Of a stretch of 64,000 nt of DNA, positions 2,175 through 61,677 are shown one piece after another; position 1 is the first letter of the stretch; every line of letters begins with the position of its first letter. The stretch covers positions 62,001-126,000 of the IMG/VR virus record IMGVR_UViG_3300033977_000108; one strand, given 5' to 3'. The notes below the pieces were generated by a model. The model ran no database searches. It was given only the letters and a program-made list of their open reading frames with translations, and had not been told where the DNA came from. The position numbers were made by a program, and so were the translations under genes.

Positions 2175-2930
2175 ATGAGTGTCGAATTCAGCGTTTGCCC
2201 TAATAAAGAACCCAACAATAAGTCTATCTCTATCTATCTTATTATCAATAAGCTAAATCACAAAATGTATGTTGGACAAACCTACAGGAGCTTGAAAAAG
2301 CGCTGGTGGGAGCATTGTCGTGGAACTCAATGTAGGGTTCTGGGCAGAGCTATACGCAAATACAAGTCTGAGAACTTTATTATCACACCAATAGTATCCG
2401 TGTTTATGGAAAAAGAGGCCGATGCATTGGAAACGGAATACATAAGCTTTTTTGATACTATGAATCCGTCCAAAGAATACAATCTTACATCTGGAGGCGG
2501 TAGGGGAAGAATGCTATCCAATGAATCCAGAGATAAAATGTCCGAATCAAAAAAGGGCGAAGCAAATCCACATCGTAACTTGATGAATAATAGCCAAAAA
2601 TACAGAATGAACTGGAAAGAGAACATGAAAAAGGCAATACATGGACATCCACATTGGGATTGGACTGGAAAATCCCCAGCGGCAATAAGCAGATACCTGA
2701 GAGTTCATTTTGGCGAGCCTAACAAATGCGAAAACGTTCATTGTATATACCCTCGTAAGATTGGTAAAAAGGGAAAATTACTACAGAAACCTACTGGATA
2801 CAAGTGGATAAATATCACTGATAATAATCTATCAAAGACTAGAGATGCTTGGCGCATATTATGTAATAGTTGCGCTTCATTCTGGAAGTGGAATGGCTTT
2901 GGTAATAAAAGTGAGGTGTGCTTTGCCTGA
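2175..2930 (+). CDS. Free-standing GIY-YIG homing endonuclease
   Basis: SIYLIINKLNHKMYVGQT..RWWEH..E..YNLTSGG, NUMOD3-like SNESRDKMSESKKG; AT-rich relative to flanks. Confidence 0.9.
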   Translation: MSVEFSVCPNKEPNNKSISIYLIINKLNHKMYVGQTYRSLKKRWWEHCRGTQCRVLGRAIRKYKSENFIITPIVSVFMEKEADALETEYISFFDTMNPSKEYNLTSGGGRGRMLSNESRDKMSESKKGEANPHRNLMNNSQKYRMNWKENMKKAIHGHPHWDWTGKSPAAISRYLRVHFGEPNKCENVHCIYPRKIGKKGKLLQKPTGYKWINITDNNLSKTRDAWRILCNSCASFWKWNGFGNKSEVCFA

Positions 2931-5463
2931 AAAACCCTTATGGTCAATAGTAAATATTATGCGAAACGAAGAAGCTCAGCTTCCTGGTCTAGCCGCTTCA
3001 TTAAGAGAATTCTTGGGGCGCGGTGGGGACTGGATTATCCTTGACACAGGGTCGATTGATAATAGCGTAAAAATTGCCAAGTCTCTTGGAGCGCGAGTTT
3101 TCGAAGCAGGGGAAAAGTTTATCTTTGCCATAAACGAGGATACAGCCAATAAAATAAATGAACGATTTATTATTCCTCCTGAAGAGCCTATCATAAAAGC
3201 CGGCGATAAGCTTTTTGATTATTCAAGTGCCAGAAATGAAGCTGCAAGCTATGCGCTGAATGATATGTGTCAGATGCCAGATGTAGATGAGAAATTCACG
3301 AAATGTGATATAGATTATATCAATGATGTAATAAGACAAGGCTATACACAAATAGAGTTCTCCTTTATTTTTGCGCATCTACCAAATGGCAAACCAGCTG
3401 TCCAATTCAGACAATCAAAAAGCTACAATCGCAAAATAATGAAATGGGTAGGCTATGTTCATGAAGTCCTTCAAGGAGATGCTAAACGAATCTACATTCC
3501 TCCAGATAAGCTTCTATTAGAGCACTTCCAGGCGCCACAGGCGCATCGTAGCCGATACATGGCAGGTCTCGCTTTAGATTGCTGGCAACATCCAGATAAC
3601 GATAGGAATTCCCACTACCTCGCCCGCGAACTATTCTGGAGCGGTCGCTATCATTCTGCAATTAAGGAATTTACGCGCCATGTCGCCATGAACCGTTGGA
3701 TACAAGAGCGCGGGGAATCAATGATTTTCATAGGCGATGCCCATTTAGCCCTGGGTGATGAGGAGAAAGCCATAGAGGCCTGGCATAAGGCTATTCAGAT
3801 AGATGATACGAGGCGCGCGGCCTGGATGCACCTGGCAGACCTTTATTGTAAAAAGAATAATCCACAGAGAGTTATTTGCTATTGTACCGCGGCCCTGGAA
3901 ATCCCGCCTAATGACTGCTACATGAATTTGAGTGCTCATTATACCTTTGAGCCTCACGAGCGTCTCTATTGGGCTTATAATGCCTTGGGCAACAAAGAAA
4001 AGGCCAAGGAGCACTGGAAGAAAGCATTTGACTATTGGCCTGATAACCCTAAGTTCCTGGCTGATAAGCAGTACTATGACCCAGCATCAGAGGAAGAGAT
4101 ACTACCGAAACTGGCTATTCTTCTTCCTACTTTGGGCCGGCCGGAAGGGTTAGAACGATGCCTGGAATCCATTCGTAAATCATTCTATCCAAAAGATTTG
4201 ATTACTGTCTATACAGATGACGATGCGGAAGCCTCCGTCCCTGTAAAAGTAAATCGTCTGGCAAAGGCTCATCTAGATGTGGATGCTTATGTCTATGCTG
4301 CCAATGATGTAGTGTTTGAGACCTTTTCTCTTCGTGATGCCGCCCGCGCCTCAAAAGAGCATGGATTGGTAGCCTTCAATTCAGGAGACCTCTACCCAGA
4401 CCAAGGGAACATCTGCGAGCACTTTATCATTACCAAGAATCTGGTGGATAAACTGGGAGAGATTTTCTGTGAGCGGTTCCATCATGTGGGCTGTGATAAT
4501 CTGCTCTGGGCGAAAGCCAGCAAGTTGGGGCAGGCCTATCGTTGTGAGGCGGCTATTATAAAACACCATCACTTTGCCAAGGGTGAGCCAATGGATGCCG
4601 TTTATGAGCGCGGCTGGTCGCAGGTGGAACAGGACCGCGCCATACTGAAAGAAGAACTGGCTAAACTTGAAGATCCCAACCGCGTAGAAGTGATAACCAA
4701 CATCCCCAAGCGTATCTTCACCATCTTCTTGAACGATTATGACGGAATGCCTTCAGTAGCCAAGAGATGCTTCCCTACGCACCAACTGCCTGGCTATGAG
4801 CATCGCTTCATTACAATGAAGAACGCCTACCTGGAGGCGCCCTACATTCAACAGGCCCTGGCCTCGAATAATAAAACCAAGTGGGTAAAGATTGCTGATT
4901 ATCTACGCATCTGGTATCTGCTGACAGAGGGCGGAATCTATGTGGATTCGGACATGGAAATCTTGCCGGGGAAGAACTTTGACCAGTTCTTACATTATAG
5001 GATGTTCGCCGGTAAAGAACACAATGGCTGGATAAGCAATGCCCTCATGGGTGCCGAAAAGGGCTATCCGTTCTTATCTGCTTGGCTGACTTACATGGAA
5101 AAGAACTTCCGCGGCGATGATGGGAAGGTCTATGAAGCCGCTATGGAGCCCATGACTAAGAACTACTGGCCTGGTGGCTCGGTTTTTTCTTATAATAACT
5201 TGGCCGATGTCATGGACCAGAAGCCTGGGGCTGCGAAAACTTTGTATCAGGAACCGCCTAATCCAGGCTGGTATAGGGAAGGCTTCATAGTTTATCCCCC
5301 AGAGTATTTCAATAACTTTGATCCAAGGACTTGGAAGCACGTAGTAAGCCCAGAGACCATAGCGATACATCACTTCACTAATGCATGGTTAGAAAGACGC
5401 CAGCAGCGCCCTTGTTGCGATTGGCAAAGCGATTGGGAAACGTGGCGCGAAAGAGGGAGTTAA
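2923..5463 (+). CDS. Multi-domain glycosyltransferase: GT2 + TPR + GT2-like + GT32-like (DxD)
   Basis: MRNEE..ILDTGSIDNS..DYSSARN..DVDE; TPR helices; ILLPTLGRPE..ANDV; IPKRIFTI..ADYLRIWYLLTEGGIYVDSD..AIHHFTNAW. TTG start at 2923 after GAGGTG is preferred over 2845. Confidence 0.85.
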   Translation: MPEKPLWSIVNIMRNEEAQLPGLAASLREFLGRGGDWIILDTGSIDNSVKIAKSLGARVFEAGEKFIFAINEDTANKINERFIIPPEEPIIKAGDKLFDYSSARNEAASYALNDMCQMPDVDEKFTKCDIDYINDVIRQGYTQIEFSFIFAHLPNGKPAVQFRQSKSYNRKIMKWVGYVHEVLQGDAKRIYIPPDKLLLEHFQAPQAHRSRYMAGLALDCWQHPDNDRNSHYLARELFWSGRYHSAIKEFTRHVAMNRWIQERGESMIFIGDAHLALGDEEKAIEAWHKAIQIDDTRRAAWMHLADLYCKKNNPQRVICYCTAALEIPPNDCYMNLSAHYTFEPHERLYWAYNALGNKEKAKEHWKKAFDYWPDNPKFLADKQYYDPASEEEILPKLAILLPTLGRPEGLERCLESIRKSFYPKDLITVYTDDDAEASVPVKVNRLAKAHLDVDAYVYAANDVVFETFSLRDAARASKEHGLVAFNSGDLYPDQGNICEHFIITKNLVDKLGEIFCERFHHVGCDNLLWAKASKLGQAYRCEAAIIKHHHFAKGEPMDAVYERGWSQVEQDRAILKEELAKLEDPNRVEVITNIPKRIFTIFLNDYDGMPSVAKRCFPTHQLPGYEHRFITMKNAYLEAPYIQQALASNNKTKWVKIADYLRIWYLLTEGGIYVDSDMEILPGKNFDQFLHYRMFAGKEHNGWISNALMGAEKGYPFLSAWLTYMEKNFRGDDGKVYEAAMEPMTKNYWPGGSVFSYNNLADVMDQKPGAAKTLYQEPPNPGWYREGFIVYPPEYFNNFDPRTWKHVVSPETIAIHHFTNAWLERRQQRPCCDWQSDWETWRERGS

Positions 5464-5466
5464 GGA

Positions 5467-6441
5467 ATGAAAATCGCTATCGTCTATCCAACTCTCTTAC
5501 CACTAGCCTGGGATGTATCTGGCGGCATCGTCCATACTTTGCGGAAGCTCGGGCACCTGGTGATGGAGATGCCTCAGTCCATAGAGTGCCATACTTCGGT
5601 CAACTGGTGGTCACGGCTTGATGAAATAAACGCTGGAGATTTATTCTTACTGATAGCCCCGGAATGGGCTATTGAGGGAGATGGCTATTGTGGGTATCAT
5701 AATGCCGAGCCTAAACCTAAAATAGATAGTATTCTATCAATGATAAAGATAAAGAAGGCGGCACTATTCACCGAAAATCAAGTGGTGGATGATGGGAAGA
5801 AGACCTTTGATTTCAAGCAGATAGCTTCAATGTTTGATTTCAATTTCTTTATTACAGCGCAGGAGGCTGCGCTCACAGGCGGTCTTTGGCTGCCGCCTGC
5901 CGTGGATACGGATATGTTTCATCCCACTGGGCAGCTGCGCACGATAGAAATAGCCGCGCCAGGAACAAGTTGGTCTGAAAGTAAAAGAGATTTCCTTTAT
6001 AGATACAGCCAAATAGCGTCTCCTCAATATATCCCTGTTGTGGGCAAATGCATAGTAGAGAACTTGGATGGAATCAGCCTGTACGAAACCGCCAAGCTAC
6101 TGGCTTATGATTATAACCGGGTAAAAATAGTAGTATCTTTACCCCCATGGAAGAATCATGTACCTACCTTTCTTCCTTTGCGGGCTACCGACGCAATGGC
6201 TTGTGGTTGTTGTGTTCTCACGCCGGTGCTCCGTGGCGCAGCGGCTGAAAATAGCAAGTTTATAAATGGAGTAGACCTTTTCTATTATGAGCCGACGCCC
6301 GCGGGCTTGTTAGAGACATTGCTGCGCGTAATAGACAAGCCAGAGAAACGCGACGCAGTAGCTGCCCGCGCTCCGCTCGCGATACAAGATGGAAATACTT
6401 TGGAGCAGCGAATGGAGACTATGCTGTCAGTTTGCTCATAG
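5467..6441 (+). CDS. GT-B (GT4/CgeB-like) glycosyltransferase
   Basis: WLPPAVDTDMFHP; LRATDAMACGCCVLT; C-terminal NTLEQRMETML. Confidence 0.7.
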   Translation: MKIAIVYPTLLPLAWDVSGGIVHTLRKLGHLVMEMPQSIECHTSVNWWSRLDEINAGDLFLLIAPEWAIEGDGYCGYHNAEPKPKIDSILSMIKIKKAALFTENQVVDDGKKTFDFKQIASMFDFNFFITAQEAALTGGLWLPPAVDTDMFHPTGQLRTIEIAAPGTSWSESKRDFLYRYSQIASPQYIPVVGKCIVENLDGISLYETAKLLAYDYNRVKIVVSLPPWKNHVPTFLPLRATDAMACGCCVLTPVLRGAAAENSKFINGVDLFYYEPTPAGLLETLLRVIDKPEKRDAVAARAPLAIQDGNTLEQRMETMLSVCS

Positions 6442-6450
6442 GATATTGCT

Positions 6451-7548
6451 ATGCTTTATCTAAACATGATAGTAAGAGACGAAGCTTCTTGTATCAAGCG
6501 CTGCCTTGATTCCATCAAACCATATATACAGGGCTGGGCTATCCTGGATACTGGTTCCACCGATGGGACGCAGGATATTATAAGGAAGGAATTAGCCAAT
6601 CTGCCCGGTGAATTGAGAGAGGCTGATTTCACAGACTTTGCCACAGCCAGAAATAAGGCTCTGGTACTTGCGAGGGCTTGGACTACGGAAGAGGATTATC
6701 TCCTGCTGATGGATGCTGATGAGGAACTCAAACAAGAAGAAAATACTATATTTCCTACCTTATCAGCAGATGTCTATGATTCCCTGATTCGTCTGGGGGG
6801 CTGTGAGTATTGGCGCACGCTAATCATCAAAGCACATTGGCCTTGGAAGTGGGCGGGCCCCTGCCATGAAAGAATTGCCTGCGATGGCCCTTTCACAAGA
6901 GATAAAATACGAGGTTTCTGGCGGCAGGCGTATCAGCATAAAGAAGAAGATAAAAAGGAGAGATCTCTCTGGTATGCCGCCATGCTGGAAAAAGAGATGG
7001 ATAAAGACCCGAAGGATGCGCGTGCTTGTTTCTATTGGGCGCAAAGCCTGCGGGATGCCGGAGAGTTGGAAAAGGCTGCGTTAGGCTATCGGCGTCGGGC
7101 TACGATGGGCGGCTTCCAAGAAGAAGTTTACATTTCTCTTCTCAATGTCGCCCGTATTTATGAGCGATTGAACAAGCCGGAAGATGTAGTAATAAACGCT
7201 TATCTAATGGCCGCTGCGTCTCGTCCTTCGCGCGCCGAAGCGTTAGGTAGCCTGATGTATTATCTGCGCAGCAGGAAGCGTTTCTATGAAGCTGCTCTTA
7301 TAGCCAGAGAAGCTTGCACGCTAATGCCAACCAATGACCTGCTATTCGTGGAACCAGAATGGGTCAATTGGCGTATCTTGGATGAGGCCTCCATCTCCTA
7401 TACTTGGGCCGGCCGCCTACGCCAAGCAAGAAATGCTATCTTGGCATTAATTACCAGACCTATCCCAGAGGCGCATAAACAGCGCATAGAAGCGAACCGC
7501 GACCTAATCATAAAAGCAGCAACCCCGCCAAATAAGCCTCAATCATAG
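6451..7548 (+). CDS. GT2 glycosyltransferase with TPR domain
   Basis: LNMIVRDEA..ILDTGSTDGT..DFATARNKAL..LMDADE..HE; TPR repeats; paralogue of the N-terminus of 2923..5463. Confidence 0.88.
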   Translation: MLYLNMIVRDEASCIKRCLDSIKPYIQGWAILDTGSTDGTQDIIRKELANLPGELREADFTDFATARNKALVLARAWTTEEDYLLLMDADEELKQEENTIFPTLSADVYDSLIRLGGCEYWRTLIIKAHWPWKWAGPCHERIACDGPFTRDKIRGFWRQAYQHKEEDKKERSLWYAAMLEKEMDKDPKDARACFYWAQSLRDAGELEKAALGYRRRATMGGFQEEVYISLLNVARIYERLNKPEDVVINAYLMAAASRPSRAEALGSLMYYLRSRKRFYEAALIAREACTLMPTNDLLFVEPEWVNWRILDEASISYTWAGRLRQARNAILALITRPIPEAHKQRIEANRDLIIKAATPPNKPQS

Positions 7549-7569
7549 AACAACATACGGACTTCTTCT

Positions 7570-8104: not shown

Positions 8105-8107
8105 TAT

Positions 8108-14505: not shown

Positions 14506-14537
14506 GGCCGCGGCGCTTGGTCGCGGCCTTCTTTCTT
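14506..14537 (+). terminator. Intrinsic terminator after the tube gene
   Basis: GGCCGCGGC-gcttg-GTCGCGGCC followed by TTCTTTCTT. Confidence 0.7.
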
Positions 14538-51448: not shown

Positions 51449-51457
51449 GAGTGATTT

Positions 51458-52225: not shown

Positions 52226-52226
52226 G

Positions 52227-52394
52227 ATGGCTAAGAAGCTGATAACAGGCAAGATCTCAGCAGCTGCCAAGCAGCGAGGCTATAATAAGGCTCAGCCGTT
52301 GTGGTTTACAATGCCGCCTTATATCAAGGTAATCGGGCCCTTATCAGCTCACTTTGAGCCCAAGAGCCAACCACGGACAAAGTTCCATAAATAG
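52227..52394 (+). CDS. 55-aa basic microprotein
   Basis: AAGGTG RBS; MAKKLITGKISAAAKQRG... Confidence 0.5.
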   Translation: MAKKLITGKISAAAKQRGYNKAQPLWFTMPPYIKVIGPLSAHFEPKSQPRTKFHK

Positions 52395-52413
52395 CAAGAA
52401 CCAGAACATAAAA

Positions 52414-52950
52414 ATGACTAACCATGGCTCTATACTTCCTCCGGAGGCCAAGTGGCCGCTTCTTGTGGATTATGCCCACAAGATAGGCGCTAAAGTACTT
52501 ATAGAAACAGGTACTCACAGGGGATATACGGTAGAACACGCACTTCCTTTCTTTAGGGACATTTATTCTATTGAACTGGGCGAGCATCTTTACGAATATT
52601 GTGTCCAGATGTTCGCGGGGCAGGATAACGTACATCTTTTCCAAGGAGATAGCGCTGTTCTTCTTCCTATTGTGCTGGAGCATGTAAATGAGTCAGCAAT
52701 CTTTTGGCTGGATGCCCATTATTCGGGAGGAGATACTGTGCTCGGGCCCAAAGGTAGCGCTATTGGCGGAGAGATAGATGCCATTCTGAAGTGGGGCAGG
52801 GGAGATGCTGCAATACTCATAGATGATATACGAGACTTTGGAGGTGGAGATTATCCTCCTATTGAAGAGATTGGAAAGAAGTTGCTTCTCGCTCATCCTG
52901 ACTGGGTTTTCTATGTAGAGAATGACATAGCCAGAGCGCACAGGTCATAG
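52414..52950 (+). CDS. Class I SAM-dependent methyltransferase (sugar O-methyltransferase-like)
   Basis: LIETGTHRG..SIEL..GDS..FWLDAH..ILIDD. Confidence 0.75.
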   Translation: MTNHGSILPPEAKWPLLVDYAHKIGAKVLIETGTHRGYTVEHALPFFRDIYSIELGEHLYEYCVQMFAGQDNVHLFQGDSAVLLPIVLEHVNESAIFWLDAHYSGGDTVLGPKGSAIGGEIDAILKWGRGDAAILIDDIRDFGGGDYPPIEEIGKKLLLAHPDWVFYVENDIARAHRS

Positions 52951-52967
52951 CCAAGTTGTGGAGGAAA

Positions 52968-53750
52968 ATGAAGCCCGTCATATATTCCGATTTCAATTGG
53001 CAGCCAAAATTGACGGATAGGGACGTTCAAATTGCCATTATGGTGGATTATCGCCCAGAACAAGATGCTTTTTGGGAGGCGCCCATTAGAATATTCGTCC
53101 AAGCCGAACCTCCATGTGTGCGTCCTGATGTACTTGCCCGTTTATCCAAAGAACAGAGTAGATTTACAGCCATTTTAGGTTGGCATTCTTCGCTTCGTGA
53201 CTGCCCGAATGCCAGCTATTTCAATCTCTGTACTGAGACACGTCTCGGAGAGAATTATCAGCCGCTTGCCGATAAAAAGTTTGGTGCTTCTTATTTAATT
53301 AGCACCAAAGCATGGTGCCCAGGCCACATATTCAGGCAAGCTGTCTTTGATGCTGTGGGAAGCTTTGATGGGTTTGAAATTGCCAAATTAAAGAATCTGC
53401 CTTCGCAATACATAGAAAAGGCAGATTTCATCGGCCATTACCAATTTGATATCTCTATTGAAAACGAATTCATCGAGAATTGGTTTACGGATAAGATAAT
53501 TGATGCCTGGGTGGCGAAGGTTGTGCCGATCTATTGTGGGTGCCCGAATCTCGCCGATTTTGGATTTGATACGAGCGGGGTCTTATATTTTTCCAGTATT
53601 GATGATCTAAAAGGGCTTTTGCAACGGATCACTCCGAATACCTATGCTAGCATGTCGGTTGCCATAGAGACCAATTATAACCTGGCGAAGAAATGGATTG
53701 ACCCTTGGCTGCTGGATAAAGAAATAACCAGGATACTGGAGGGAAATTGA
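52968..53750 (+). CDS. GT10 (alpha-1,3-fucosyltransferase-like) glycosyltransferase
   Basis: YQFDISIEN..WFTDKIIDAW..VPIYCG motif; GGAGG RBS. Confidence 0.85.
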   Translation: MKPVIYSDFNWQPKLTDRDVQIAIMVDYRPEQDAFWEAPIRIFVQAEPPCVRPDVLARLSKEQSRFTAILGWHSSLRDCPNASYFNLCTETRLGENYQPLADKKFGASYLISTKAWCPGHIFRQAVFDAVGSFDGFEIAKLKNLPSQYIEKADFIGHYQFDISIENEFIENWFTDKIIDAWVAKVVPIYCGCPNLADFGFDTSGVLYFSSIDDLKGLLQRITPNTYASMSVAIETNYNLAKKWIDPWLLDKEITRILEGN

Positions 53751-54448
53751 ATACATCTCCAGCGAAACCGACTAGGGTGCTCATAGCGATTACCAGCTGC
53801 GACAAAGAACCTTATCTATTTAGGCAGAAGCTTCAGCAAGAGACATGGATACCTATAGCCCAGCAGGCTGGTTATGCCGTTGAGTTCTTTACTGGCAAGC
53901 GTTTAGGTGTCTCGGATGACTATTTGAAACTGCCCCTCAAATTAAGGGCTATGTGCCGTTGGGCAACAGAGCAGAATTATGATTACATGCTCAAAGTAGA
54001 CGATGATACTTATGTGAATGTCGGGGGCTTGAGAATTATAAGGGCAGATTATGCTGGAGTTCCTATACCACCAAATGATTGTGGGGATTATAAGAATTCA
54101 GCTCCGGAACTTAAACCTGGGACTACGAAATATCCCTATTGTCCTGGAGGGGCGATCTGGTTATCAGCGAGAGCGATGAGGTTTATTGCGAATGCGCTGG
54201 TTGAGACGGATTGGGCTGATGATAGATGGGCAGGACAAGTGCTGGGGAAATATAACATAATTATCTGTTCTATGGCAGATAAGATGATTCTGGGTCCTGT
54301 TAATCATGGTATGTTCAACCCAGCAACTTTGCGGCCTCTATTGAAGAAAGAGATTGTAGCTGTTATGCAAGCCGGTGCAGGTGACAGAGGCAAAGACAAT
54401 TTTGTTCTATGCCAGAAATTCTTTGCTGGTGCTTATATATTGAGATGA
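53747..54448 (+). CDS. GT31 (galactosyltransferase/Fringe-like) glycosyltransferase
   Basis: QETW..L..K..YDYMLKVDDDTYV..GGAIWLS..DD. Confidence 0.8.
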   Translation: MNTSPAKPTRVLIAITSCDKEPYLFRQKLQQETWIPIAQQAGYAVEFFTGKRLGVSDDYLKLPLKLRAMCRWATEQNYDYMLKVDDDTYVNVGGLRIIRADYAGVPIPPNDCGDYKNSAPELKPGTTKYPYCPGGAIWLSARAMRFIANALVETDWADDRWAGQVLGKYNIIICSMADKMILGPVNHGMFNPATLRPLLKKEIVAVMQAGAGDRGKDNFVLCQKFFAGAYILR

Positions 54449-54825
54449 AACAAATTCCCAAAGCTTGGCGGCGGCACAACAGAAAGAGAAAGAAATCCAG
54501 TTATGAAGTCATTGTAGAATGCTGGCTAAAGGAACTGGGTGCTCATTATAAGCGGGAAGCGGCAATCGGCCATTGCCACGCTGACTTCCTGATTTATCCC
54601 AGGACACTCGTAGAAGTCAATGGATGCTACTGGCACAAGTGCCTAAAGTGCTTTCCAAAGCCGACTAAGAAGCAGGAAGCGCAGAGAATCAGAGATTTCT
54701 ACCGCTATCAGTTCTTCCAAAAGAAAGGCTATAGAGTAGTGGTTATACGAGGGCACGAGATAGATGAAGACCCATTGGGAGTAAAAGAACACATTAAGAA
54801 ATTGTGCTCGTCTTTGGATGAGTGA
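54445..54825 (+). CDS. Vsr/DUF559-like PD-(D/E)xK endonuclease
   Basis: ADF..VEVNGCYWH.C..RD..GYRVVVI..E; ATGA-coupled. Confidence 0.8.
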   Translation: MKQIPKAWRRHNRKRKKSSYEVIVECWLKELGAHYKREAAIGHCHADFLIYPRTLVEVNGCYWHKCLKCFPKPTKKQEAQRIRDFYRYQFFQKKGYRVVVIRGHEIDEDPLGVKEHIKKLCSSLDE

Positions 54826-54827
54826 TT

Positions 54828-55768: not shown

Positions 55769-55784
55769 AACATCGGGAGGAACT

Positions 55785-56519
55785 ATGGCAAAGCTAATAA
55801 ATTTGCTTGGGCAGCGTTTTGGCAGACTTGTTGTAGTAGAGCGGATGAGACAAAATAAGAGAGATAGGCCGGCATGGCGATGCTTGTGTGATTGTGGGGT
55901 TGAAACAATCATTGAAGGCGAAAATCTTAGATATGGCCATACAAAAAGCTGCGGTTGTTTAATACCAAATTTCATAGATCTGACTGGACAACGTTTTGGT
56001 AAATTGGTTGTTTTAGAGATGGCTGATAGGAACAAATTTCATCATATTCTATGGAAATGTAAATGTGATTGTGGAATGCTAAAATCTGTTTCTACGACCG
56101 TGCTAAGGAATGGAAAAACTATCAGTTGTGGCTGCGCTCATAAAGAAGCCATGGTTGCTCTTAGTAAGCAGTATCGTGAAGCTCATGGCTGTATTAGTGA
56201 AACCTATGAATATAAGATATGGCAATCGGCAAAACATAGGGCAAAGCGTGATAATCTACCGTTTAATATCTTGCCATCCGATATCATAATCCCTAAATTA
56301 TGCCCGGTTCTCGGTATTGAGTTGAAAAGGAATGGGCGAGAAGCAAAAGGTGATAGTCCATCTATGGATAAGATAATCCCACAACGAGGCTATGTTAAAG
56401 GAAATATCAGGATTATCAGCTTTAGAGCCAATTCTATAAAGAGGGACGCTACGGCTGAAGAGCTTAGAAAAGTGGCCGACGATGCAGCAAAACAGGAAGC
56501 TATGCTATTTCATCAATAG
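55785..56519 (+). CDS. Free-standing HNH-type homing endonuclease
   Basis: Two (N/D)L.GQRFG.LVV..W.C.CDCG..SCGC repeats; CPVLG..SMDKI..GYVKGNIRIISFRAN. Confidence 0.88.
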   Translation: MAKLINLLGQRFGRLVVVERMRQNKRDRPAWRCLCDCGVETIIEGENLRYGHTKSCGCLIPNFIDLTGQRFGKLVVLEMADRNKFHHILWKCKCDCGMLKSVSTTVLRNGKTISCGCAHKEAMVALSKQYREAHGCISETYEYKIWQSAKHRAKRDNLPFNILPSDIIIPKLCPVLGIELKRNGREAKGDSPSMDKIIPQRGYVKGNIRIISFRANSIKRDATAEELRKVADDAAKQEAMLFHQ

Positions 56520-56528
56520 GGAGTATCT

Positions 56529-56774: not shown

Positions 56775-56956
56775 GGAATATACCGGTCCGTGGAAACAAA
56801 TAGGTGTATCTCCCAATCGTATGACTCATGCAAATGCGTAATGACTTTAGGCGGGTGCAGCCAATAAAGCAGCATGGTGCTCCAGGCAATCTTATCCCTC
56901 CTGTAGTTCTGTCCATAATCAAATAATCTGGGCTTATTGTCCGTGTTTTTAGGCAT
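56771..56956 (-). CDS. Hypothetical 61-aa protein
   Basis: TAATG-coupled to the GT gene; converges with the + strand gene at CTAG. Confidence 0.5.
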   Translation of the reverse strand: MPKNTDNKPRLFDYGQNYRRDKIAWSTMLLYWLHPPKVITHLHESYDWEIHLFVSTDRYIP

Positions 56957-58440
56957 TATTGTCTCTTCAAGATACCATTTTCAAAGTGTCGGGAGCGTCC
57001 TGGGATTAGAGGCGCTGCCGCTGCTGACTTCTGTACCGTTCGGCGCTGAATAGGCCTCTGGATAGGCCTCTGGTGCGGCAGAATTGGCTTCCTGACGGGG
57101 TTCGGGATACTGGTTAGGGTCTGAGGTATAGGCTTTTTATAGCTTTTACTCCTGGGTTTCTGCGTTTCGGTCCTATCTGTCCTGAAATCATAGATATACA
57201 GAGGTTCTTCTATCGTATAGCCGGTCTTCAAAACGCCGTCCTTTGTCATTAGATGCCAGCGTTCGGAGTCTTCACTCATGCTTTTGGCAGGAAATCTGTA
57301 CTGGCGGGCGATTGTGGCACGCGTAGGGCATAAATGATTGGGCTCGCGGATTTGAAATACATCGCTCAAGTCTGTATCTTGTTTGTATTCAATGGCAAAG
57401 CGGGAAATCCTGGGATGCTTCAAGTCCAACATAGTAAGTTGAAGGAAGCAGATGACGTCTACATCTTTCTCTGCGGCGGCCACCAGCTTGGCTACATAGT
57501 CGGCCGTAATCTTATCATCGTCATCAATGTAGCATAGATATTTCCCTCTGGCTATGTCCATCAATTCATTGCGTTTAGTACCTACATCCTTTTCCAGATT
57601 ATCAATGTTATACAGTATTTCAACATCGTCTGGGTTGGGCAAGTCAAACACCTGGGCGTATAACCCAGCCAATAAATCCACCAATAGCTGATGCCGGCTT
57701 TCAATCGAACAGATTAGAATGCTCAAAATAGGGTCTTTGATATCGAAGTTCTTAGCCCGCCGTTTGTTAAAAAGCTCTCCATCTACACCATAATAGGTCT
57801 CATTCCTTTGCATCAGCTCATCCCATTGGGCGCCGGTGAAAATCGGATGCAAATGCTTGACCAAGCACTTCCCTGAAGCCCTGCTCCATTCGGGTACCTC
57901 GGTGAATTTATGCAGCATTTTATGTACTTCACCATTCTCTGTGTCGCCGTATAAAGAAACATAGGCAGGAGAAAAGAAGTAGTTGAAACGACGATACAGA
58001 TTATAGCCGATAATGCAAAGGGTCGGCATGCTATCCGGCCGGAAGCCATCCCAATAGTATAAACTACCATCCAGCCCTGGATAATACTTATCCATGTCTG
58101 TCGCTATGATGTCGTCATAATCTTTTACCTGCGGCCACATATCGTCGGCGGCTACGATGGCAATGTCAAACCTGCGGCCGTGCATCCCTATATTGCAGGC
58201 CTCATGCTTGCAGCGGGCATGGACTATCATAAACTCTACATTGGCGCCATTGCTGGTGTATTTATGGCTGGTGCCCGCGCTAAAAAGATCCAAAGCGGTC
58301 TGTAAGGTTGGGTCATCATCATCAAGATTGACAAGGAAGTTCACATTATGCTTGCCAGAGAGCAGGGAAATCCAAGTGTCCAAACATTCCTTGAATTGTG
58401 TCGGGCGGGAGCGGGTTGGGAATTTGATTAGTATTTCCAT
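56956..58440 (-). CDS. Tandem GT2-like glycosyltransferase with basic tail
   Basis: ILIKFPTRSRP..AADDM; ILSILICS..KRNEL..GKYLCYIDDDD..SED. Confidence 0.85.
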   Translation of the reverse strand: MEILIKFPTRSRPTQFKECLDTWISLLSGKHNVNFLVNLDDDDPTLQTALDLFSAGTSHKYTSNGANVEFMIVHARCKHEACNIGMHGRRFDIAIVAADDMWPQVKDYDDIIATDMDKYYPGLDGSLYYWDGFRPDSMPTLCIIGYNLYRRFNYFFSPAYVSLYGDTENGEVHKMLHKFTEVPEWSRASGKCLVKHLHPIFTGAQWDELMQRNETYYGVDGELFNKRRAKNFDIKDPILSILICSIESRHQLLVDLLAGLYAQVFDLPNPDDVEILYNIDNLEKDVGTKRNELMDIARGKYLCYIDDDDKITADYVAKLVAAAEKDVDVICFLQLTMLDLKHPRISRFAIEYKQDTDLSDVFQIREPNHLCPTRATIARQYRFPAKSMSEDSERWHLMTKDGVLKTGYTIEEPLYIYDFRTDRTETQKPRSKSYKKPIPQTLTSIPNPVRKPILPHQRPIQRPIQRRTVQKSAAAAPLIPGRSRHFENGILKRQ

Positions 58441-59840
58441 CAGATTGATGTATAGAACTCGTGCATCTTCTCGGGCGTCACATAATGCGTGCTGATGATG
58501 TCATTATCCTTCGTGGGGTAGGCATCAGAAATAGAAGACTGATAGCGCGTATCCCAGTGTAAGAAAATCTTGTGCTGTGCCAATAGGCGGCTGACTGCTG
58601 TGTCTTCTGGTTGCAGACCGCCTTCAAAGATTGTAAACTCTTCCAAGGAATGGGATAGAATGGCTTTCATTGCTGCCCGGCTTAGCCAATAACCAGCGCC
58701 GCCGGAAGCAAATGGCACATCGCCGGACCTGTGCTCCGCATTTAGTTCCCGCCCTACATAGTCATAACAAACATAATCCGAATACAAAAGCCTATCGGGC
58801 ACTGCATAGGTGTCGGTGTCGCATTTGAAAAGATAGGTATAGCCTTGTTTATAGGCCCAATCAATCAGAGCATAAACCTTGTGGCATAGATGGTCATAAT
58901 CGCCAGGCACATCCAGGTATACTTCATTCGGCTTTGTTGTTGGCTGGTCGCCGGCCCCAAAGAAGAAGCGTACATCTACATTGGGAAGATTGCCTAACCA
59001 GGTTTCCTGTTGGGCCTTCTGAGATTCCCTGTTCTTATCACAGGCTGGGACAGCGACTAATATCTTTTCATCAGGCACTGCCAGTTTATACCAGCGGTCG
59101 GGTATAATGTCTTTGGCGTCGATGTCTTTGATTGCAAACCATTTATCTGGGGCTATGCGCAACCCAGTGTATTGGGATAGCCACGAGCCCCACCAAGAAT
59201 AGCTACTATTTGTGATAATCGCATGGCGGCATAAAGTCATCAATCGCAGATGCACGTATTTATCCCCGGGGACTACTACCCCGTCAAACTGGGACAATCC
59301 ATTCCAACCTGGTTCATCGGTGAAGATGTAGAACTTGGGATTCTGCACTTTCTGCTGAATCAGACTACACGCCGCGCGATACCAAGACAAAGGCATCAAT
59401 CCATGGATTTTCATCACATCGCTTCGTAGATAATCACCCCGGCGGATAGATACAGCTACGGATTCGCTATTGCTTATCTCTTTGGCCAGGTCAGGTGGCC
59501 TTATCTGATAACGAAAAGCAAGGTGCCGCCTGATAACGGGTTCTATCGCCGCAAAATACTTCTCGGATTGCCAATAACCATCAAAGCAATTATTGTCCCC
59601 TGCTTCAAGAAATGAGGGATTGAATGTAAAAGCATCCTCTGTTTTCGTGATGGGGATAGCATGGCTTATAGTGGAAGCCTTGATCATGAAATGCTGGAGA
59701 TCGTATGTTCTGCCAGAACTATCAGGATAGGTAGAAGTATCTAATAGCAAAGATGTTTTATACCGCTGGGCAAGAGCGGTGCCAAAGGCGTACTGGAACA
59801 TCTGATTCCCGAGACCACCTCTGAGTTTTATAGTAATCAT
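58440..59840 (-). CDS. GT11 (alpha-1,2-fucosyltransferase-like) fused to a GT31-like domain
   Basis: GGLGNQMFQYA, GYWQSEKYF, IRRGDY, NSSYSWW; then FKCDTDTY..SGGAGYWLS..ED. Confidence 0.9.
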   Translation of the reverse strand: MITIKLRGGLGNQMFQYAFGTALAQRYKTSLLLDTSTYPDSSGRTYDLQHFMIKASTISHAIPITKTEDAFTFNPSFLEAGDNNCFDGYWQSEKYFAAIEPVIRRHLAFRYQIRPPDLAKEISNSESVAVSIRRGDYLRSDVMKIHGLMPLSWYRAACSLIQQKVQNPKFYIFTDEPGWNGLSQFDGVVVPGDKYVHLRLMTLCRHAIITNSSYSWWGSWLSQYTGLRIAPDKWFAIKDIDAKDIIPDRWYKLAVPDEKILVAVPACDKNRESQKAQQETWLGNLPNVDVRFFFGAGDQPTTKPNEVYLDVPGDYDHLCHKVYALIDWAYKQGYTYLFKCDTDTYAVPDRLLYSDYVCYDYVGRELNAEHRSGDVPFASGGAGYWLSRAAMKAILSHSLEEFTIFEGGLQPEDTAVSRLLAQHKIFLHWDTRYQSSISDAYPTKDNDIISTHYVTPEKMHEFYTSI

Positions 59841-60571
59841 GTCCTTTTTAGCACGCCATTCTCAAAATGCCTGGAGCCGTGAGAAGTGGGGACTATGTTC
59901 TTTGGCGTGGGCGTTGGCTTACGAATAACCTGGCGTCTAGGCAGGATTGGTTTTGTGGCGGGGGCTGTGATTGGGTTCTTGGCATGAGTTTCCGTACCCT
60001 TGAAGCGGAAATCATAAAGGTAGATGGGCACAGGAATGGTAGTGCAGGTTCTTATGTGCTGGAATACTTCCATAGCCCATGCGCTATCTTCCCCATAGGA
60101 AATCTCTGGGAACTTGTGGGCTTTGGCGTGGGCGGCTAAAATAGGACAGACATGGTAGGGAGGTTTATTATACACACCTTCAATGGTAGGGCTCTCCTTG
60201 CCATAATCCATTGAATGCCTAAACATCTTAGGGTTTCTTAAGTCCCAAGTAATAATGCCGGTAATGCCTACAGCGTCAGGGGATGTTTTTACGGCGTCCA
60301 GGATGCGGGCTACATAATCGCCGGCAACTCGGTCATCGTCATCAACAAAGACCACATACTTGCCGCGGGCCATCTCAAGGAGTTTATTGCGCTTGGCGCC
60401 TACGGTAATCTCTTTATTATCAACCAGATAGATGATTTCTACTGATTCAGGATTGGGCAGGTATTTAATCTGGGCGTATAAGGATGCAAGCAATCCCTGG
60501 AGCAATTCTTTCCTGGCTTCCAGCGAACAAATGAGAATACTTAAAATAAGAGATTGTTCGGTCTCCGGCAT
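59837..60571 (-). CDS. GT2 glycosyltransferase with basic tail
   Basis: ILSILICS..GAKRN..GKYVVFVDDDD..GED; paralogue of the C-domain of 56956..58440. Confidence 0.85.
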   Translation of the reverse strand: MPETEQSLILSILICSLEARKELLQGLLASLYAQIKYLPNPESVEIIYLVDNKEITVGAKRNKLLEMARGKYVVFVDDDDRVAGDYVARILDAVKTSPDAVGITGIITWDLRNPKMFRHSMDYGKESPTIEGVYNKPPYHVCPILAAHAKAHKFPEISYGEDSAWAMEVFQHIRTCTTIPVPIYLYDFRFKGTETHAKNPITAPATKPILPRRQVIRKPTPTPKNIVPTSHGSRHFENGVLKRT

Positions 60572-61677
60572 TAAGTTGCATCCTCATCGCGGGCCCTCAT
60601 GATAGCTCGTATTCCATCTCTCAATTCAATGGTGCGTTGGTCTGTGGCGCCAATCAGTTGCCATAATCCCTGATGGTCGCGTTTCAAATCGTGGGCCGGG
60701 TCAAAGCGAATTCTGTCAAGGAAAGACCAGCGAGTAGCATAGCCTCTCTTGTTCTTTGATCCGTGATAGAAGTGGAACACATGGCCGGGCATAAAGCCTA
60801 CATTCTTCTTTATGTGGTCGGCGCATAGCTTGGCCCAATTTCGCACCATGCTATTATAGATAGTCAGGTGGTCTGTATGCTCGGCTATTGAGGATTCAAC
60901 ATGGCCTATAAGAGCCGTAGCCATATGCCAATCGGCAGATCCCATTATAGCCCAGTCAATCAGCATACCAACTTTGGCTAAGGAACTCCTACGCCAAGCC
61001 CAAGCCAACCCAGGCTGCCCCCAGAAGCCTTTTGCATAACCACCAGGGCCATAGGCAGCCTTGAATGGGATGGGGTCATGCCCGCCAGGCCTATGAGGCT
61101 CATTCTGCTTTGCAAACCATTCGGCTATAAAGCCTGGAAACATCAGCGTATCACGCGCGAACAGGTTCTTATCCCTTTGTCTCACGCCCATGGGCTCATA
61201 GTTGGCATTCAAGTCTTGTACTGTGCTGAACATCTGTATGACATCATAATGTTGCAGCAGATGTAGTGTTTCTTGTGCCCAGTCCTGGCGCGCGAACATA
61301 GCGTCGGCGTCAATAAAGGCTATGTATTGAGCCTCCGCCGGCAATCGCTGAACCATTAGATTCTGGGCGTTTTCTTTATACCAGAGCTCATCATGGGAGC
61401 GCAGCTGCAAATGGTGCGGATTGTCAGGCTGCGTTACTTCAAACTGGCGGCCACCAAAAGCTACCTCGGCGGTATATAAAACGGCACCGCCTGCCTCGAT
61501 TTGGCGTTCAAAATTATGATAGTTCTGATAACGAGAACGCCAACGGAGAGGATTGCTCACCATGGTGACAACATAAAGTTTGTCTGGGAAAGGGTGTATA
61601 CCGGGTTTGGCATGTGCAGGATGCTCAATATATGCCCCGGAACCCTCTGGAAAGTGTTTCAGGGGATGGGCATTCAT
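60571..61677 (-). CDS. GT-A-fold glycosyltransferase-like protein
   Basis: WYKENAQN..IAFIDAD..G.AWA..GSAD..HFYHG. Confidence 0.6.
   Translation of the reverse strand: MNAHPLKHFPEGSGAYIEHPAHAKPGIHPFPDKLYVVTMVSNPLRWRSRYQNYHNFERQIEAGGAVLYTAEVAFGGRQFEVTQPDNPHHLQLRSHDELWYKENAQNLMVQRLPAEAQYIAFIDADAMFARQDWAQETLHLLQHYDVIQMFSTVQDLNANYEPMGVRQRDKNLFARDTLMFPGFIAEWFAKQNEPHRPGGHDPIPFKAAYGPGGYAKGFWGQPGLAWAWRRSSLAKVGMLIDWAIMGSADWHMATALIGHVESSIAEHTDHLTIYNSMVRNWAKLCADHIKKNVGFMPGHVFHFYHGSKNKRGYATRWSFLDRIRFDPAHDLKRDHQGLWQLIGATDQRTIELRDGIRAIMRARDEDAT

What the first reader, a model, noticed from the sequence alone, without database searches (positions are those of the whole stretch)
2923..61677. Phage-encoded glycosylation arsenal: 9 genes, ~13 GT domains, plus a methyltransferase
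Seen: three GT clusters (2923-7548, 52414-54448, 56956-61677) bracket the tail module. They include GT2-like x6, GT-A-like, GT4-like, GT32, GT10, GT11 and GT31 x2, with internal paralogue pairs. Known: GT10/GT11/GT31 build fucosylated/galactosylated (Lewis/H-type) glycans, and some phages and giant viruses glycosylate their virions. Inference: a complete pathway for a branched, methyl-capped virion glycan. Late-operon placement and the lack of TM anchors favour this over host O-antigen conversion. No nucleotide-sugar synthesis genes occur in the window.
Basis: partly seen in the sequence, partly recalled or inferred. Interest (0 to 1): 0.72.

Follow-up and report, generated by a model that had tools for sequence, protein, structure and literature searches.

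The report
Phage sugar-coating kit for collagen-like fibres
An uncultivated 205-kb peat phage carries nine glycosyltransferase genes (13 catalytic domains) and a methyltransferase, and comparison with other phages suggests that at least the first cluster puts sugars on a giant collagen-like virion fibre encoded right next to it, much as Clostridium decorates its spore-coat collagen BclA3.

Summary
Three clusters (2923-7548, 52414-54448, 56956-61677) carry 9 glycosyltransferase (GT) genes with 13 GT domains, plus one class I SAM methyltransferase. They are the only GT2-type matches in a complete 204,633-bp phage genome. That genome has no nucleotide-sugar, base-hydroxymethylation or polytopic membrane genes.

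A 1,879-aa collagen-like protein with 112 Gly-x-Thr triplets, (GYT)n and (GPT)n, ends at window 2103, directly upstream of cluster 1.

The GT2+TPR module of the 846-aa cluster-1 enzyme lies within 10 kb of such collagen genes in 72 of 80 IMG/VR loci. The figure is 4 of 80 for GT11 control loci. In a relative, the enzyme and the collagen gene sit together at a different genomic site.

The module is 28% identical (E 5e-37) to a clostridial GT2+TPR protein 4 bp upstream of a GPT collagen gene. That is the published SgtA/BclA3 arrangement. Its best solved folds are the peptide glycosyltransferases SunS and ThuS.

Clusters 2 and 3 belong to a separate GT11/GT10/GT31/methyltransferase neighbourhood that is usually collagen-free. 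Domain fusions and one adjacency in other phages tie them to the cluster-1 enzyme.

Verdict: fibre glycosylation is probable for cluster 1. A single shared pathway is plausible but unproven. This is a new variant of a known kind.

The parts
1..2103 (+). C-terminal 700 aa of a 1,879-aa collagen-like fibre protein (whole gene = genome 58464-64103). It has (GYT)n/(GPT)n runs interrupted by globular domains. Proposed acceptor of the glycan.
   Evidence: 112 G-x-T-G triplets in 13 runs. Pfam Collagen 79.8 bits; BclA_C 22.8 bits, below cut-off. PHROG tail-fibre and collagen-like minor tail families. It holds every G-x-T/S run of 6 or more triplets in the genome.
2175..2930 (+). GIY-YIG + NUMOD3 homing endonuclease inserted between the fibre gene and GT cluster 1
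   Evidence: Pfam GIY-YIG 35.6 bits, NUMOD3 23 bits. Homologues sit at the same place in L003 and L021.
2923..4092 (+). Cluster 1 multi-enzyme, module 1 (aa 1-390): GT2-like GT-A domain plus TPR. Proposed initiating protein O-glycosyltransferase (SgtA/SunS-like).
   Evidence: Pfam GT2 and TPR. Invariant D120-x-D122-E in 25 homologues. AF2 model pLDDT 91.8. Best solved folds SunS/ThuS, E 2.5e-14. 28% identity, E 5e-37, to the clostridial GT2-TPR protein next to a GPT collagen gene. 72/80 loci collagen-linked.
4096..4671 (+). Cluster 1 multi-enzyme, module 2 (aa 392-583): GT-A-like domain
   Evidence: phrog_14945 glycosyltransferase E 1e-6. Present in 70/80 GT2-TPR loci. Found in shuffled order in homologues.
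4702..5397 (+). Cluster 1 multi-enzyme, module 3 (aa 594-825): GT32-like domain with a VDSD DxD motif
   Evidence: Gly_transf_sug 30.9 bits, Caps_synth 25.1 bits. DxD read directly.
5467..6441 (+). GT-B fold (GT4-like) glycosyltransferase
   Evidence: Glyco_trans_1_2 39.7 bits. A 36%-identical homologue follows the multi-enzyme in relative L001.
6451..7548 (+). Second GT2 + TPR-like protein, a paralogue of module 1
   Evidence: GT2 27.2 bits. phrog_13126 E 1.6e-27. NCBIfam best hit SunS family, 38 bits, far below the equivalog cut-off. DxD motif LMDADEE. Homologue next to the multi-enzyme in L029.
52414..52950 (+). Class I SAM-dependent methyltransferase (O-methyltransferase-like)
   Evidence: ESM Atlas feature score 0.98 and TM 0.91-0.93 to class I / O-methyltransferase clusters. 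A 39%-identical domain (E 7e-32) is fused to a collagen-linked multi-enzyme, P0016.
52956..53750 (+). GT10-like (alpha-1,3-fucosyltransferase-like) protein
   Evidence: PDB sequence hits 9s6a E 8e-9 and 2nzw E 2.6e-7. Pfam 20.7 bits, below cut-off. ENxxxxxWFTDK motif.
53747..54448 (+). GT31-like glycosyltransferase with a DDD motif
   Evidence: Galactosyl_T 25.9 bits. A 38%-identical domain (E 5e-45) is fused into multi-enzyme P0015.
54409..54825 (+). Vsr/DUF559-type endonuclease (mobile element) beside cluster 2
   Evidence: DUF559 23.6 bits. Conserved in L018 and L331.
55785..56519 (+). HNH homing endonuclease between clusters 2 and 3
   Evidence: phrog_374 E 2.6e-42.
56956..58440 (-). Two-domain GT: GT-A (aa 1-232) plus GT2 (aa 233-440), with a Pro-rich tail
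   Evidence: phrog_14945 E 9e-12, phrog_8858 E 2e-34. GT2 29.3 bits. Atlas 0.99, TM 0.9.
58440..59840 (-). GT11 (alpha-1,2-fucosyltransferase family) fused to a GT31-like domain
   Evidence: Glyco_transf_11 72.5 bits. IRRGDY motif invariant across 25 homologues. C-terminal half is a paralogue of 53747-54448, E 8.7e-15.
59837..60571 (-). GT2 glycosyltransferase, paralogue of the C-terminal domain of 56956-58440
   Evidence: GT2 36.5 bits. 40% identity, E 8e-55.
60571..61677 (-). GT-A fold glycosyltransferase of a mainly viral family (motif IDADA)
   Evidence: Atlas feature score 0.99, TM 0.79-0.92 to viral GT2-like clusters. Pfam GT2 only E 0.04.
61698..62501 (-). Unknown 267-aa protein that travels with cluster 3
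   Evidence: phrog_19005, unknown function. Lies inside the conserved cluster-3 block of relative L331.

Best explanation
The window comes from a complete, uncultivated 204.6-kb myovirus-like phage from a peat metagenome. It encodes a protein-glycosylation system aimed at its own collagen-like fibre.

Shown:
- Nine soluble GT genes (13 domains with intact DxD or family motifs) and one SAM methyltransferase lie in three clusters.
- A 1,879-aa Gly-[Tyr/Pro]-Thr collagen-like protein is encoded immediately upstream of cluster 1.
- The GT2+TPR module of the cluster-1 enzyme belongs to a family that in phages lies within 10 kb of such collagen genes in 72 of 80 loci.
- The module is homologous to a clostridial GT2+TPR protein beside a GPT collagen gene.
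- It has the fold and architecture of the peptide glycosyltransferases SunS and ThuS.

Inferred:
- In the infected cell's cytoplasm, the TPR domain holds the unfolded collagen-like chain.
- The GT-A domain puts a first sugar on Thr at the third position of the triplets. By analogy with SgtA this may be a HexNAc; that is not shown here.
- The fused GT-A and GT32 domains, the GT-B enzyme and the second GT2-TPR paralogue then extend or diversify the glycan.
- The GT31, GT10-like, GT11 and further GT2 enzymes and the methyltransferase of clusters 2 and 3 probably add galactose- or HexNAc-type, fucose-type and methyl caps to the same glycan. This link rests only on fusions and one adjacency seen in other phages.
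- All sugar donors must come from the host's pools.
- The product would be a glycan-covered fibre on the virion, a viral counterpart of the BclA nap of spores.
For: Domain inventory.

Substrate gene.

Linkage of the GT2-TPR module to collagen genes:
- 5 of 5 long contigs have G-x-T collagen genes beside the enzyme.
- 72 of 80 IMG/VR loci do, against 4 of 80 GT11 control loci. Odds ratio 171, Fisher p 1e-30.
- The result holds after dereplication: 55/62, 25/30 and 16/18 clusters at 90, 70 and 60% identity.
- In relative L018 the collagen gene and the multi-enzyme together occupy the site where this genome has clusters 2 and 3. In relative L001 they sit at the cluster-1 site.

Homology and fold:
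- The clostridial 363-aa GT2+TPR protein lies 4 bp upstream of a 510-aa GPT collagen gene. It is 28% identical, E 5e-37.
- SgtA (358 aa, GT-A + TPR, upstream of bclA3) adds beta-O-GlcNAc to Thr of GPT repeats in vitro (PMC7157674).
- AF2 model pLDDT 91.8; top solved folds SunS/ThuS, E 2.5e-14.
- The SunS family is the best NCBIfam hit of the second paralogue.

Links from clusters 2 and 3 to cluster 1:
- Methyltransferase fused in P0016 (E 7e-32) and GT31 fused in P0015 (E 5e-45).
- A 471-aa GT11 gene overlaps the end of P0016's gene.

Exclusions: no ThyA, ThyX, TET/JBP or C5-methyltransferase. No protein has four or more transmembrane-like segments.
Against: - There is no biochemical, proteomic or expression evidence. 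The phage is uncultivated.
- That the collagen-like protein is a virion fibre is inferred from gene position and from PHROG hits that largely reflect the collagen repeats.
- The reverse linkage is weak. Only 6 of 79 loci found by a GYTx4 DNA pattern show the GT2-TPR module in their (often short) flanks. Most such collagens therefore do without this enzyme nearby.
- The 80 loci are not independent lineages (18 clusters at 60% identity).
- Distant homologues in cultured jumbo phages (PaBG, 28% identity) have no collagen neighbour.
- Clusters 2 and 3 belong to a guild that is normally collagen-free, so their target may differ.
- SgtA's own sequence could not be compared.
- Donor sugars cannot be read from family membership.
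Confidence: 0.6

Rival explanations
1. Clusters 2 and 3 (and conceivably all three) remodel a host envelope glycan (LPS O-antigen, capsule or S-layer glycan) during infection, for example to block superinfection. On this view only the position of cluster 1 next to the fibre gene reflects virion work.
For: GT10 and GT11 enzymes of bacteria such as Helicobacter pylori build Lewis-type O-antigens (established knowledge; solved FucT structures hit). The cyanophage literature assumes host-surface modification for the same GT families (PMC12801897). The GT11/GT10/methyltransferase/GT31 guild is not collagen-linked (4/80) and never has the GT2-TPR enzyme nearby (0/80). Soluble GTs are the norm for undecaprenyl-linked assembly. 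Cluster 3 is on the strand of the non-structural genes.
Against: The genome has no polytopic membrane protein that could serve as initiating transferase, flippase, polymerase or ligase, and no sugar-nucleotide genes. The cluster-2 methyltransferase and GT31 types occur as domains fused to the collagen-linked enzyme in other phages. A GT11 gene overlaps the end of such an enzyme gene. Cluster 2 sits inside the structural block.
Confidence: 0.25
2. The GTs glycosylate other virion proteins, such as capsid or tail-tube subunits as in mycobacteriophages, rather than the collagen-like fibre.
For: Mycobacteriophages carry GT genes in the structural region and glycosylate C-termini of capsid and tail-tube subunits (Freeman et al. 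2023, as cited in PMC12619734). Clusters 1 and 2 lie in the structural block.
Against: No Ser/Thr-rich tails were found in any other ORF of the genome; the only window with 50% or more S/T is in the collagen-like protein. The specific, conserved linkage is to G-x-T collagen genes.
Confidence: 0.08
3. The GTs hypermodify phage DNA with glycans to evade restriction.
For: Phage GTs are known to glycosylate hydroxymethylated bases, including multi-sugar chains (bioRxiv 10.1101/2023.12.21.572611).
Against: No ThyA-type hydroxymethylase, ThyX, TET/JBP dioxygenase or C5 cytosine methyltransferase was found in the complete genome. The phage has an N6-adenine methylase instead. TPR-fused GT-A enzymes with SunS/ThuS-like folds point to peptide substrates.
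Confidence: 0.03

Closest known systems
Clostridioides difficile SgtA / BclA3 (exosporium collagen-like glycoprotein and its O-GlcNAc transferase; PMC7157674)
   Same: A GT-A (GT2-like) domain is followed by TPR repeats. The gene lies next to a collagen-like gene rich in Gly-x-Thr triplets. The enzyme is soluble. A clostridial protein of the same size, architecture and context is 28% identical to module 1 over its full length.
   Different: Here the enzyme is viral and is fused to two more GT domains. It is accompanied by ten further GT domains and a methyltransferase. The triplets are mainly GYT as well as GPT. The acceptor would be a 1,879-aa phage fibre, not a spore protein. Direct homology to SgtA itself, the donor sugar and the activity are all untested.
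SunS / ThuS glycocin S-/O-glycosyltransferases (PDB 7msn, 7msk)
   Same: These are the best full-length structural matches to module 1: GT-A plus TPR, acting on peptides (E 2.5e-14, TM about 0.59). The SunS family is also the best NCBIfam hit of the paralogue at 6451-7548.
   Different: Only 14-15% identity, and the NCBIfam score (38 bits) is far below the equivalog cut-off (350). No glycocin-like Cys-peptide gene is nearby, so this is not a glycocin system.
Mycobacteriophage virion glycosylation (Freeman et al. 2023, cited in PMC12619734)
   Same: Phage-encoded GTs lie in the structural gene region and are proposed to modify virion proteins in the cytoplasm.
   Different: In mycobacteriophages one or two GTs act on C-terminal tails of capsid and tail-tube subunits. 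Here there are 13 domains, a TPR-guided initiating enzyme and a collagen-like fibre as the proposed acceptor.
GT-rich T4-like cyanophages (e.g. S-SCSM2R with 13 GTs including GT10, GT11, GT2; PMC12801897)
   Same: The same families as clusters 2 and 3. GT11 homologues at about 33% identity occur in more than 100 phage records, mostly cyanophages. Their target is also unknown.
   Different: Those phages also carry sugar-nucleotide enzymes, and the genes are assumed to change the host surface. This phage has none of those enzymes and adds the collagen-linked module.
Giant-virus glycosylated fibrils and capsids (Mimivirus, chloroviruses; Chem Rev review PMC9614988)
   Same: Virus-encoded, cytoplasmic, multi-enzyme glycosylation of virion surface structures. 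GYT-type collagen genes also occur on giant-virus MAG contigs.
   Different: Giant viruses encode their own sugar-nucleotide pathways. No homology of their GTs to module 1 was tested here.

Membership tests
SgtA-type GT-A+TPR collagen Thr O-glycosyltransferase | N-terminal GT-A (GT2-like) catalytic domain with a metal-binding DxD motif | tested here: met
   Pfam GT2 23.8-28 bits. D120-x-D122-E invariant in 25 homologues. Confident Rossmann-like model.
SgtA-type GT-A+TPR collagen Thr O-glycosyltransferase | C-terminal TPR repeats directly after the GT domain | tested here: met
   TPR_1 42.5 bits, TPR_2 42 bits at aa 233-375 of the 846-aa protein. Helical repeats at 212-385 in the model.
SgtA-type GT-A+TPR collagen Thr O-glycosyltransferase | Gene adjacent to a Gly-x-Thr collagen-like gene | tested here: met
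   The fibre gene ends 820 bp upstream with only a homing endonuclease between. 72/80 related loci against 4/80 controls.
SgtA-type GT-A+TPR collagen Thr O-glycosyltransferase | Sequence homology to SgtA itself | not tested
   No tool provided the SgtA sequence, and it was not among the 120 listed relatives of the clostridial protein. Homology to a clostridial protein of the same size, architecture and context is met (E 5e-37).
SgtA-type GT-A+TPR collagen Thr O-glycosyltransferase | Transfers beta-GlcNAc from UDP-GlcNAc to Thr of the triplets | not testable with these tools
   Needs an enzyme assay.
GT11 alpha-1,2-fucosyltransferase | Pfam Glyco_transf_11 above cut-off, and the RRGDY donor-binding motif | tested here: met
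   72.5 bits against a cut-off of 23.9. R133, R134, D136 and Y137 invariant in alignment A2. More than 2,700 homologues.
GT10 alpha-1,3/4-fucosyltransferase | Family profile above cut-off over both Rossmann domains | tested here: inconclusive
   Pfam covers only the C-terminal domain at 20.7 bits, below 23.9. PDB sequence hits to three solved FucTs, E 8e-9 to 1.8e-6, cover aa 111-225 only. The FucT-like ENxxxxxWFTDK motif is present.
GT31 (beta-1,3-glycosyltransferase / Fringe-like) | Family profile above cut-off and the DDD/DxD motif | tested here: met
   53747-54448: 25.9 bits against 23, motif VDDDTY. The C-terminal half of 58440-59840 scores only 14.1 bits but is a paralogue at E 8.7e-15 with motif CDTDTY.
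GT32 | Gly_transf_sug profile with DxD | tested here: met
   30.9 bits against 23; Caps_synth 25.1 against 24.5; motif VDSDME.
Phage DNA glycosylation systems | A route to hydroxymethyl-pyrimidines (ThyA-like hydroxymethylase, or C5-methyltransferase plus TET/JBP) | tested here: not met
   No match to PF00303, PF02511, PF12851 or PF00145 in the complete genome.
Phage O-antigen conversion (GtrABC-type) or a self-contained surface-polysaccharide locus | Polytopic membrane components (flippase, GtrA/GtrC, polymerase, initiating transferase) | tested here: not met
   No ORF of the genome has four or more transmembrane-like segments, and none of the GTs has one. This is a hydropathy scan only.
Glycocin (SunS/ThuS) systems | Equivalog-level match and a glycocin precursor peptide nearby | tested here: not met
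   38 bits against an equivalog cut-off of 350. Fold similarity only.

The most novel reading that the evidence does not exclude
Many large phages (at least 147 IMG/VR stretches), and perhaps giant viruses, coat collagen-like virion fibres with O-glycans. The glycans are built on the Thr of Gly-[Tyr/Pro]-Thr triplets by modular, domain-shuffled multi-enzyme 'assembly lines' (GT2-TPR initiator + GT-A + GT32 ± GT31 ± methyltransferases). In this phage the glycan is extended with fucose-type and methyl caps. This would be a viral, cytoplasmic protein-glycosylation system, parallel to the BclA nap of spores and so far undescribed in phages.
Probability: 0.45. Interest if true: 0.75.

Novelty: new variant of a known kind. 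Interest (0 to 1): 0.62.

Why it matters
Experimentally shown phage virion glycosylation, as far as my searches and knowledge go, rests mainly on mycobacteriophages.

If the linkage found here reflects function, it names three things for a widespread and so far unremarked class of glycosylated phage fibres in soil, peat and water: a substrate (Gly-x-Thr collagen repeats), an initiating enzyme type (GT-A+TPR), and simple test peptides.

It would also give a first concrete target for some of the many orphan GT10/GT11/GT31 genes of large phages. It would offer modular enzymes for glycosylating collagen-like biomaterials. Glycan coats on fibres could affect adsorption, stability in humic environments and recognition by hosts or grazers.

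Tried and rejected
- Near-identity DNA searches of both GT regions in the phage collection found nothing. The tail sheath has only one weak hit at 26% identity.
- Single-sequence scans of IMG/VR with the multi-enzyme and the sheath found nothing. Alignments were needed.
- Moraphages (PMC12619734) were considered as the lineage. No link was established and this was not pursued.
- The promoter and terminator scan of 51-64 kb was uninformative: 34 promoter-like sites against 20.8 expected, terminators at chance level.
There is no verdict and no evidence either way.
- The single-sequence AF2 model of the fibre's last 390 aa was unusable (pLDDT 35.4), so the BclA_C/C1q-like fold remains a weak Pfam hint only.
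- The PurZ (2-aminoadenine genome) idea for the adenylosuccinate synthetase homologue is not supported. The protein keeps the GDEGKG Asp, and its listed solved relatives are all named adenylosuccinate synthetase, E. coli PurA first.
- SgtA itself could not be retrieved.
- PaBG, a cultured phage with a distant homologue, has no collagen neighbour.
- NCBIfam gave no names for seven of the ten proteins.
- The shared C-terminal tail of two GT2 paralogues occurs nowhere else in the genome or in the fetched loci.

Full report
**Source and setting**

The window is bases 62001-126000 of a single 204,633-bp contig. IMG/VR classes the contig as having direct terminal repeats, and CheckV rates it 100% complete. 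GC is 0.50, and there are three tRNA genes. The only public run holding the sequence is a peat metagenome.

The plus-strand block from about 34 kb to 118.7 kb of the genome holds the portal, a capsid-like protein, the tail sheath and a baseplate wedge protein. The rest of the genome, on the minus strand, holds replication genes: primase-helicase, PolA-type polymerase, ribonucleotide reductase, RecD-like helicase and an N6-adenine methylase.

No catalogued phage is close. The sheath has one hit at 26% identity.

- The best-supported domains are GT11 (72.5 bits), three GT2 domains (27-37 bits), the GT-B enzyme (39.7 bits), GT32 (30.9 bits) and one GT31 (25.9 bits).
- The weaker ones are the GT10-like protein, the two phrog_14945 GT-A domains, the 368-aa GT-A protein and the second GT31. 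They are backed by hits to solved fucosyltransferases (E 8e-9), by Atlas feature and structure neighbours, or by paralogy (E 8.7e-15).
- DxD or family motifs are intact throughout.
- The GT11 IRRGDY motif is invariant among 25 homologues.
- All GT2 matches of the genome lie in the window.
- None of the GTs has a transmembrane-like segment.
- The genome has no match to Epimerase, GDP_Man_Dehyd, NTP_transferase, RmlD, DegT, CTP_transf_3 or UDPG_MGDP_dh.

The ORF that runs into the window's first 2,103 bases is the end of a 1,879-aa protein (genome 58464-64103).

- It has 13 collagen runs and 112 Gly-x-Thr-Gly triplets, mostly GYT and GPT. Globular domains separate the runs.
- Pfam Collagen scores 79.8 bits. 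A BclA C-terminal domain hit (22.8 bits) is below cut-off.
- PHROG families of tail fibres and collagen-like minor tail proteins match it.
- It holds every Gly-x-Thr/Ser run of six or more triplets in the genome.
- It ends 820 bp before GT cluster 1, with only a GIY-YIG homing endonuclease in between.

**Linkage of the cluster-1 enzyme to collagen genes**

The 846-aa cluster-1 protein has three modules: GT2+TPR (aa 1-390), GT-A (392-583) and GT32 (594-825). These modules recur in at least 178 database proteins, in shuffled order, often with fused methyltransferase domains.

- In all five long phage contigs that I opened, G-x-T collagen genes lie beside the enzyme.
- An alignment of module 1 (A1) retrieved 147 IMG/VR stretches. 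Of the 80 kept, 72 have a collagen run (6 or more triplets, at least 50% Thr/Ser in the third position) within 10 kb, in all but one of them only on the enzyme's strand. The nearest run lies 0.4-5 kb from the enzyme.
- A control set of 80 IMG/VR loci chosen by GT11 has 4 such loci, and two of those are merely Gly/Ser-rich linker-like runs. The odds ratio is 171, Fisher p 1e-30.
- After dereplication of the enzyme at 90, 70 and 60% identity, the linkage holds in 55/62, 25/30 and 16/18 clusters.
- The triplets near these enzymes have Tyr (37%), Pro (29%) or Ala (14%) in the second position and Thr (69%) in the third.
- The reverse is not true. Of 79 loci found by a GYTx4 DNA pattern, only 6 show module 1 in their often short flanks. 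Such collagens also occur on giant-virus MAG contigs.

**Synteny with true relatives**

- Contig L001 (210 kb; sheath 56% identical) has two GYT collagen genes, the multi-enzyme and the GT-B gene between the same neighbours as here.
- Contig L018 (172 kb) is collinear with window 46723-55730. It carries a collagen gene plus the multi-enzyme at the end of the late block, where this phage has clusters 2 and 3.
- The pair therefore sits together at two different genomic sites in related phages.

**Homology and fold**

A scan of species-representative genomes found relatives mostly on short MAG contigs. Collagen runs are again present for the closer relatives. In Clostridia MAGs there is a 363-aa GT2+TPR protein 4 bp upstream of a 510-aa GPT collagen gene. 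It is 28% identical to module 1 over the full length, E 5e-37.

That is the size, architecture and context published for C. difficile SgtA. SgtA is 358 aa, with GT-A at aa 1-260 and four TPRs at 262-358, and is encoded upstream of bclA3. It adds beta-O-GlcNAc from UDP-GlcNAc to Thr residues of GPT repeats in vitro (PMC7157674). I could not obtain SgtA's own sequence, so direct homology is untested.

An AlphaFold model of module 1 (pLDDT 91.8) is most similar, over its whole length, to the peptide S-glycosyltransferases SunS and ThuS, which are also GT-A+TPR (E 2.5e-14). The TPR part matches O-GlcNAc transferase and GmaR. The second GT2-TPR paralogue (6451-7548) has the SunS family as its best NCBIfam hit, far below the equivalog cut-off.

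**Clusters 2 and 3**

A neighbourhood census shows two guilds.

| Guild | Members | Near collagen genes |
|---|---|---|
| A | GT2-TPR, middle GT-A (70/80), GT32 (15/80) | yes (72/80) |
| B | GT11, GT10 (24/80), methyltransferase of the 52414 type (9/80), GT31 (5-7/80) | no (4/80); GT2-TPR in 0/80 |

Cluster 1 is guild A. Clusters 2 and 3 are guild B. Guild B's families also fill large cyanophages, where the literature assumes host-surface modification (PMC12801897). Cluster 3, including the unknown gene at 61698-62501, is conserved as a block in relative L331.

Bridges between the guilds exist:

- A 39%-identical copy of the cluster-2 methyltransferase is a domain of multi-enzyme P0016 (E 7e-32).
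- A 38%-identical copy of the cluster-2 GT31 is a domain of multi-enzyme P0015 (E 5e-45).
- On P0016's contig, a 471-aa GT11 gene overlaps the enzyme gene's end.
- GT11 is itself fused to a GT31 paralogue in this phage.

These fusion and adjacency links make a shared pathway plausible, at about even odds, but they do not prove it.

**Rivals**

- DNA glycosylation is unlikely. No ThyA, ThyX, TET/JBP or C5-methyltransferase is present.
- A self-contained surface-polysaccharide or Gtr-type system is not encoded. No ORF has four or more transmembrane-like segments.
- Soluble GTs could still feed a host pathway.
- 'Late-operon placement' applies to clusters 1 and 2 only. Cluster 3 is convergent on the other strand.

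**Mechanism proposed**

Shown: the gene set, the intact motifs, the adjacent collagen-like gene, the conserved linkage, and the homology and fold.

Inferred: the TPR domain binds the nascent, not yet trimerised collagen-like chain. The GT-A domain glycosylates Thr of the triplets. The fused and neighbouring GTs elongate the glycan. The GT31, GT10 and GT11 enzymes and the methyltransferase possibly cap it. All donors come from the host.

The result would be a glycan-coated fibre on the virion, analogous to the BclA nap of spores.

**Novelty**

The chemistry has a precedent in SgtA/BclA3, and virion glycosylation by phage GTs has one in mycobacteriophages. My literature searches found no description of a collagen-linked GT-A+TPR multi-enzyme family in phages. 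I therefore rate it a new variant of a known kind, of moderate to high interest and directly testable with peptides.

Noticed in passing
window 2175-2930, 54409-54825, 55785-56519, 63269-63769: Four homing-endonuclease-type genes (GIY-YIG+NUMOD3, Vsr/DUF559, HNH, Endonuclease VII) flank the three GT clusters. Homologues accompany the GT genes in other contigs, so they may help to move the cassettes.
   Followed up: partly
window 56956-57100 and 59837-59950 (C-termini of the two GT2 paralogues, minus strand): Both paralogues end in a Pro-rich linker followed by the same tail, G-S/R-S-R-H-F-E-N-G-[VI]-L-K-R. It occurs nowhere else in the genome or in the fetched loci. It may be a docking peptide.
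   Followed up: partly
window 18342-33738: Three consecutive giant ORFs (1,640, 1,602 and 1,888 aa) in the tail region have no Pfam match at all.
   Followed up: no
genome 196531-197811 (L012:11531-12811, minus strand), outside the window: An adenylosuccinate synthetase homologue (Pfam E 1.2e-65). It keeps the PurA-type GDEGKG loop, and its listed solved relatives are all named adenylosuccinate synthetase, E. coli PurA first. It therefore looks like a purine-metabolism gene rather than a PurZ of 2-aminoadenine genomes.
   Followed up: partly
genome 137643-140027 (L009:12643-15027, minus strand), outside the window: A single 794-aa protein fuses an N6-adenine DNA methylase with a type I specificity (S) domain.
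   Followed up: no
genome 36565-37095 (176-aa ORF), outside the window: A small protein with a short collagen-like stretch rich in G-V-T and G-Y-T triplets. It is a second possible acceptor.
   Followed up: no
L020:15611-19842 (322-kb JGI contig): Next to its collagen-linked multi-enzyme, this phage carries two methyltransferases, a GT2, a polysaccharide pyruvyl transferase and KdsD/KdsA-like genes (SIS, DAHP_synth_1). Some relatives therefore bring their own sugar chemistry.
   Followed up: no
L105, L110, L124, L162, L163, L168 and other GVMAG contigs: Long (GYT)n collagen-like repeats also occur on giant-virus (Nucleocytoviricota) MAG contigs of IMG/VR.
   Followed up: no
window 54822-55730 and genome 41851-42417: The 302-aa Gly-rich protein between clusters 2 and 3 shares its last 90 residues (38% identity) with a 188-aa protein near the start of the late block. 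It is conserved in relatives L018 and L331.
   Followed up: no
window 13762-14475 and 14517-15533: Two adjacent genes just after the tail sheath both match phrog_9206, which is annotated 'major head protein'. Given their position they are more likely tail-tube-type paralogues.
   Followed up: no
window 62521-62597 (minus strand): A tRNA-Met (CAT) gene lies directly upstream of the cluster-3 block.
   Followed up: no
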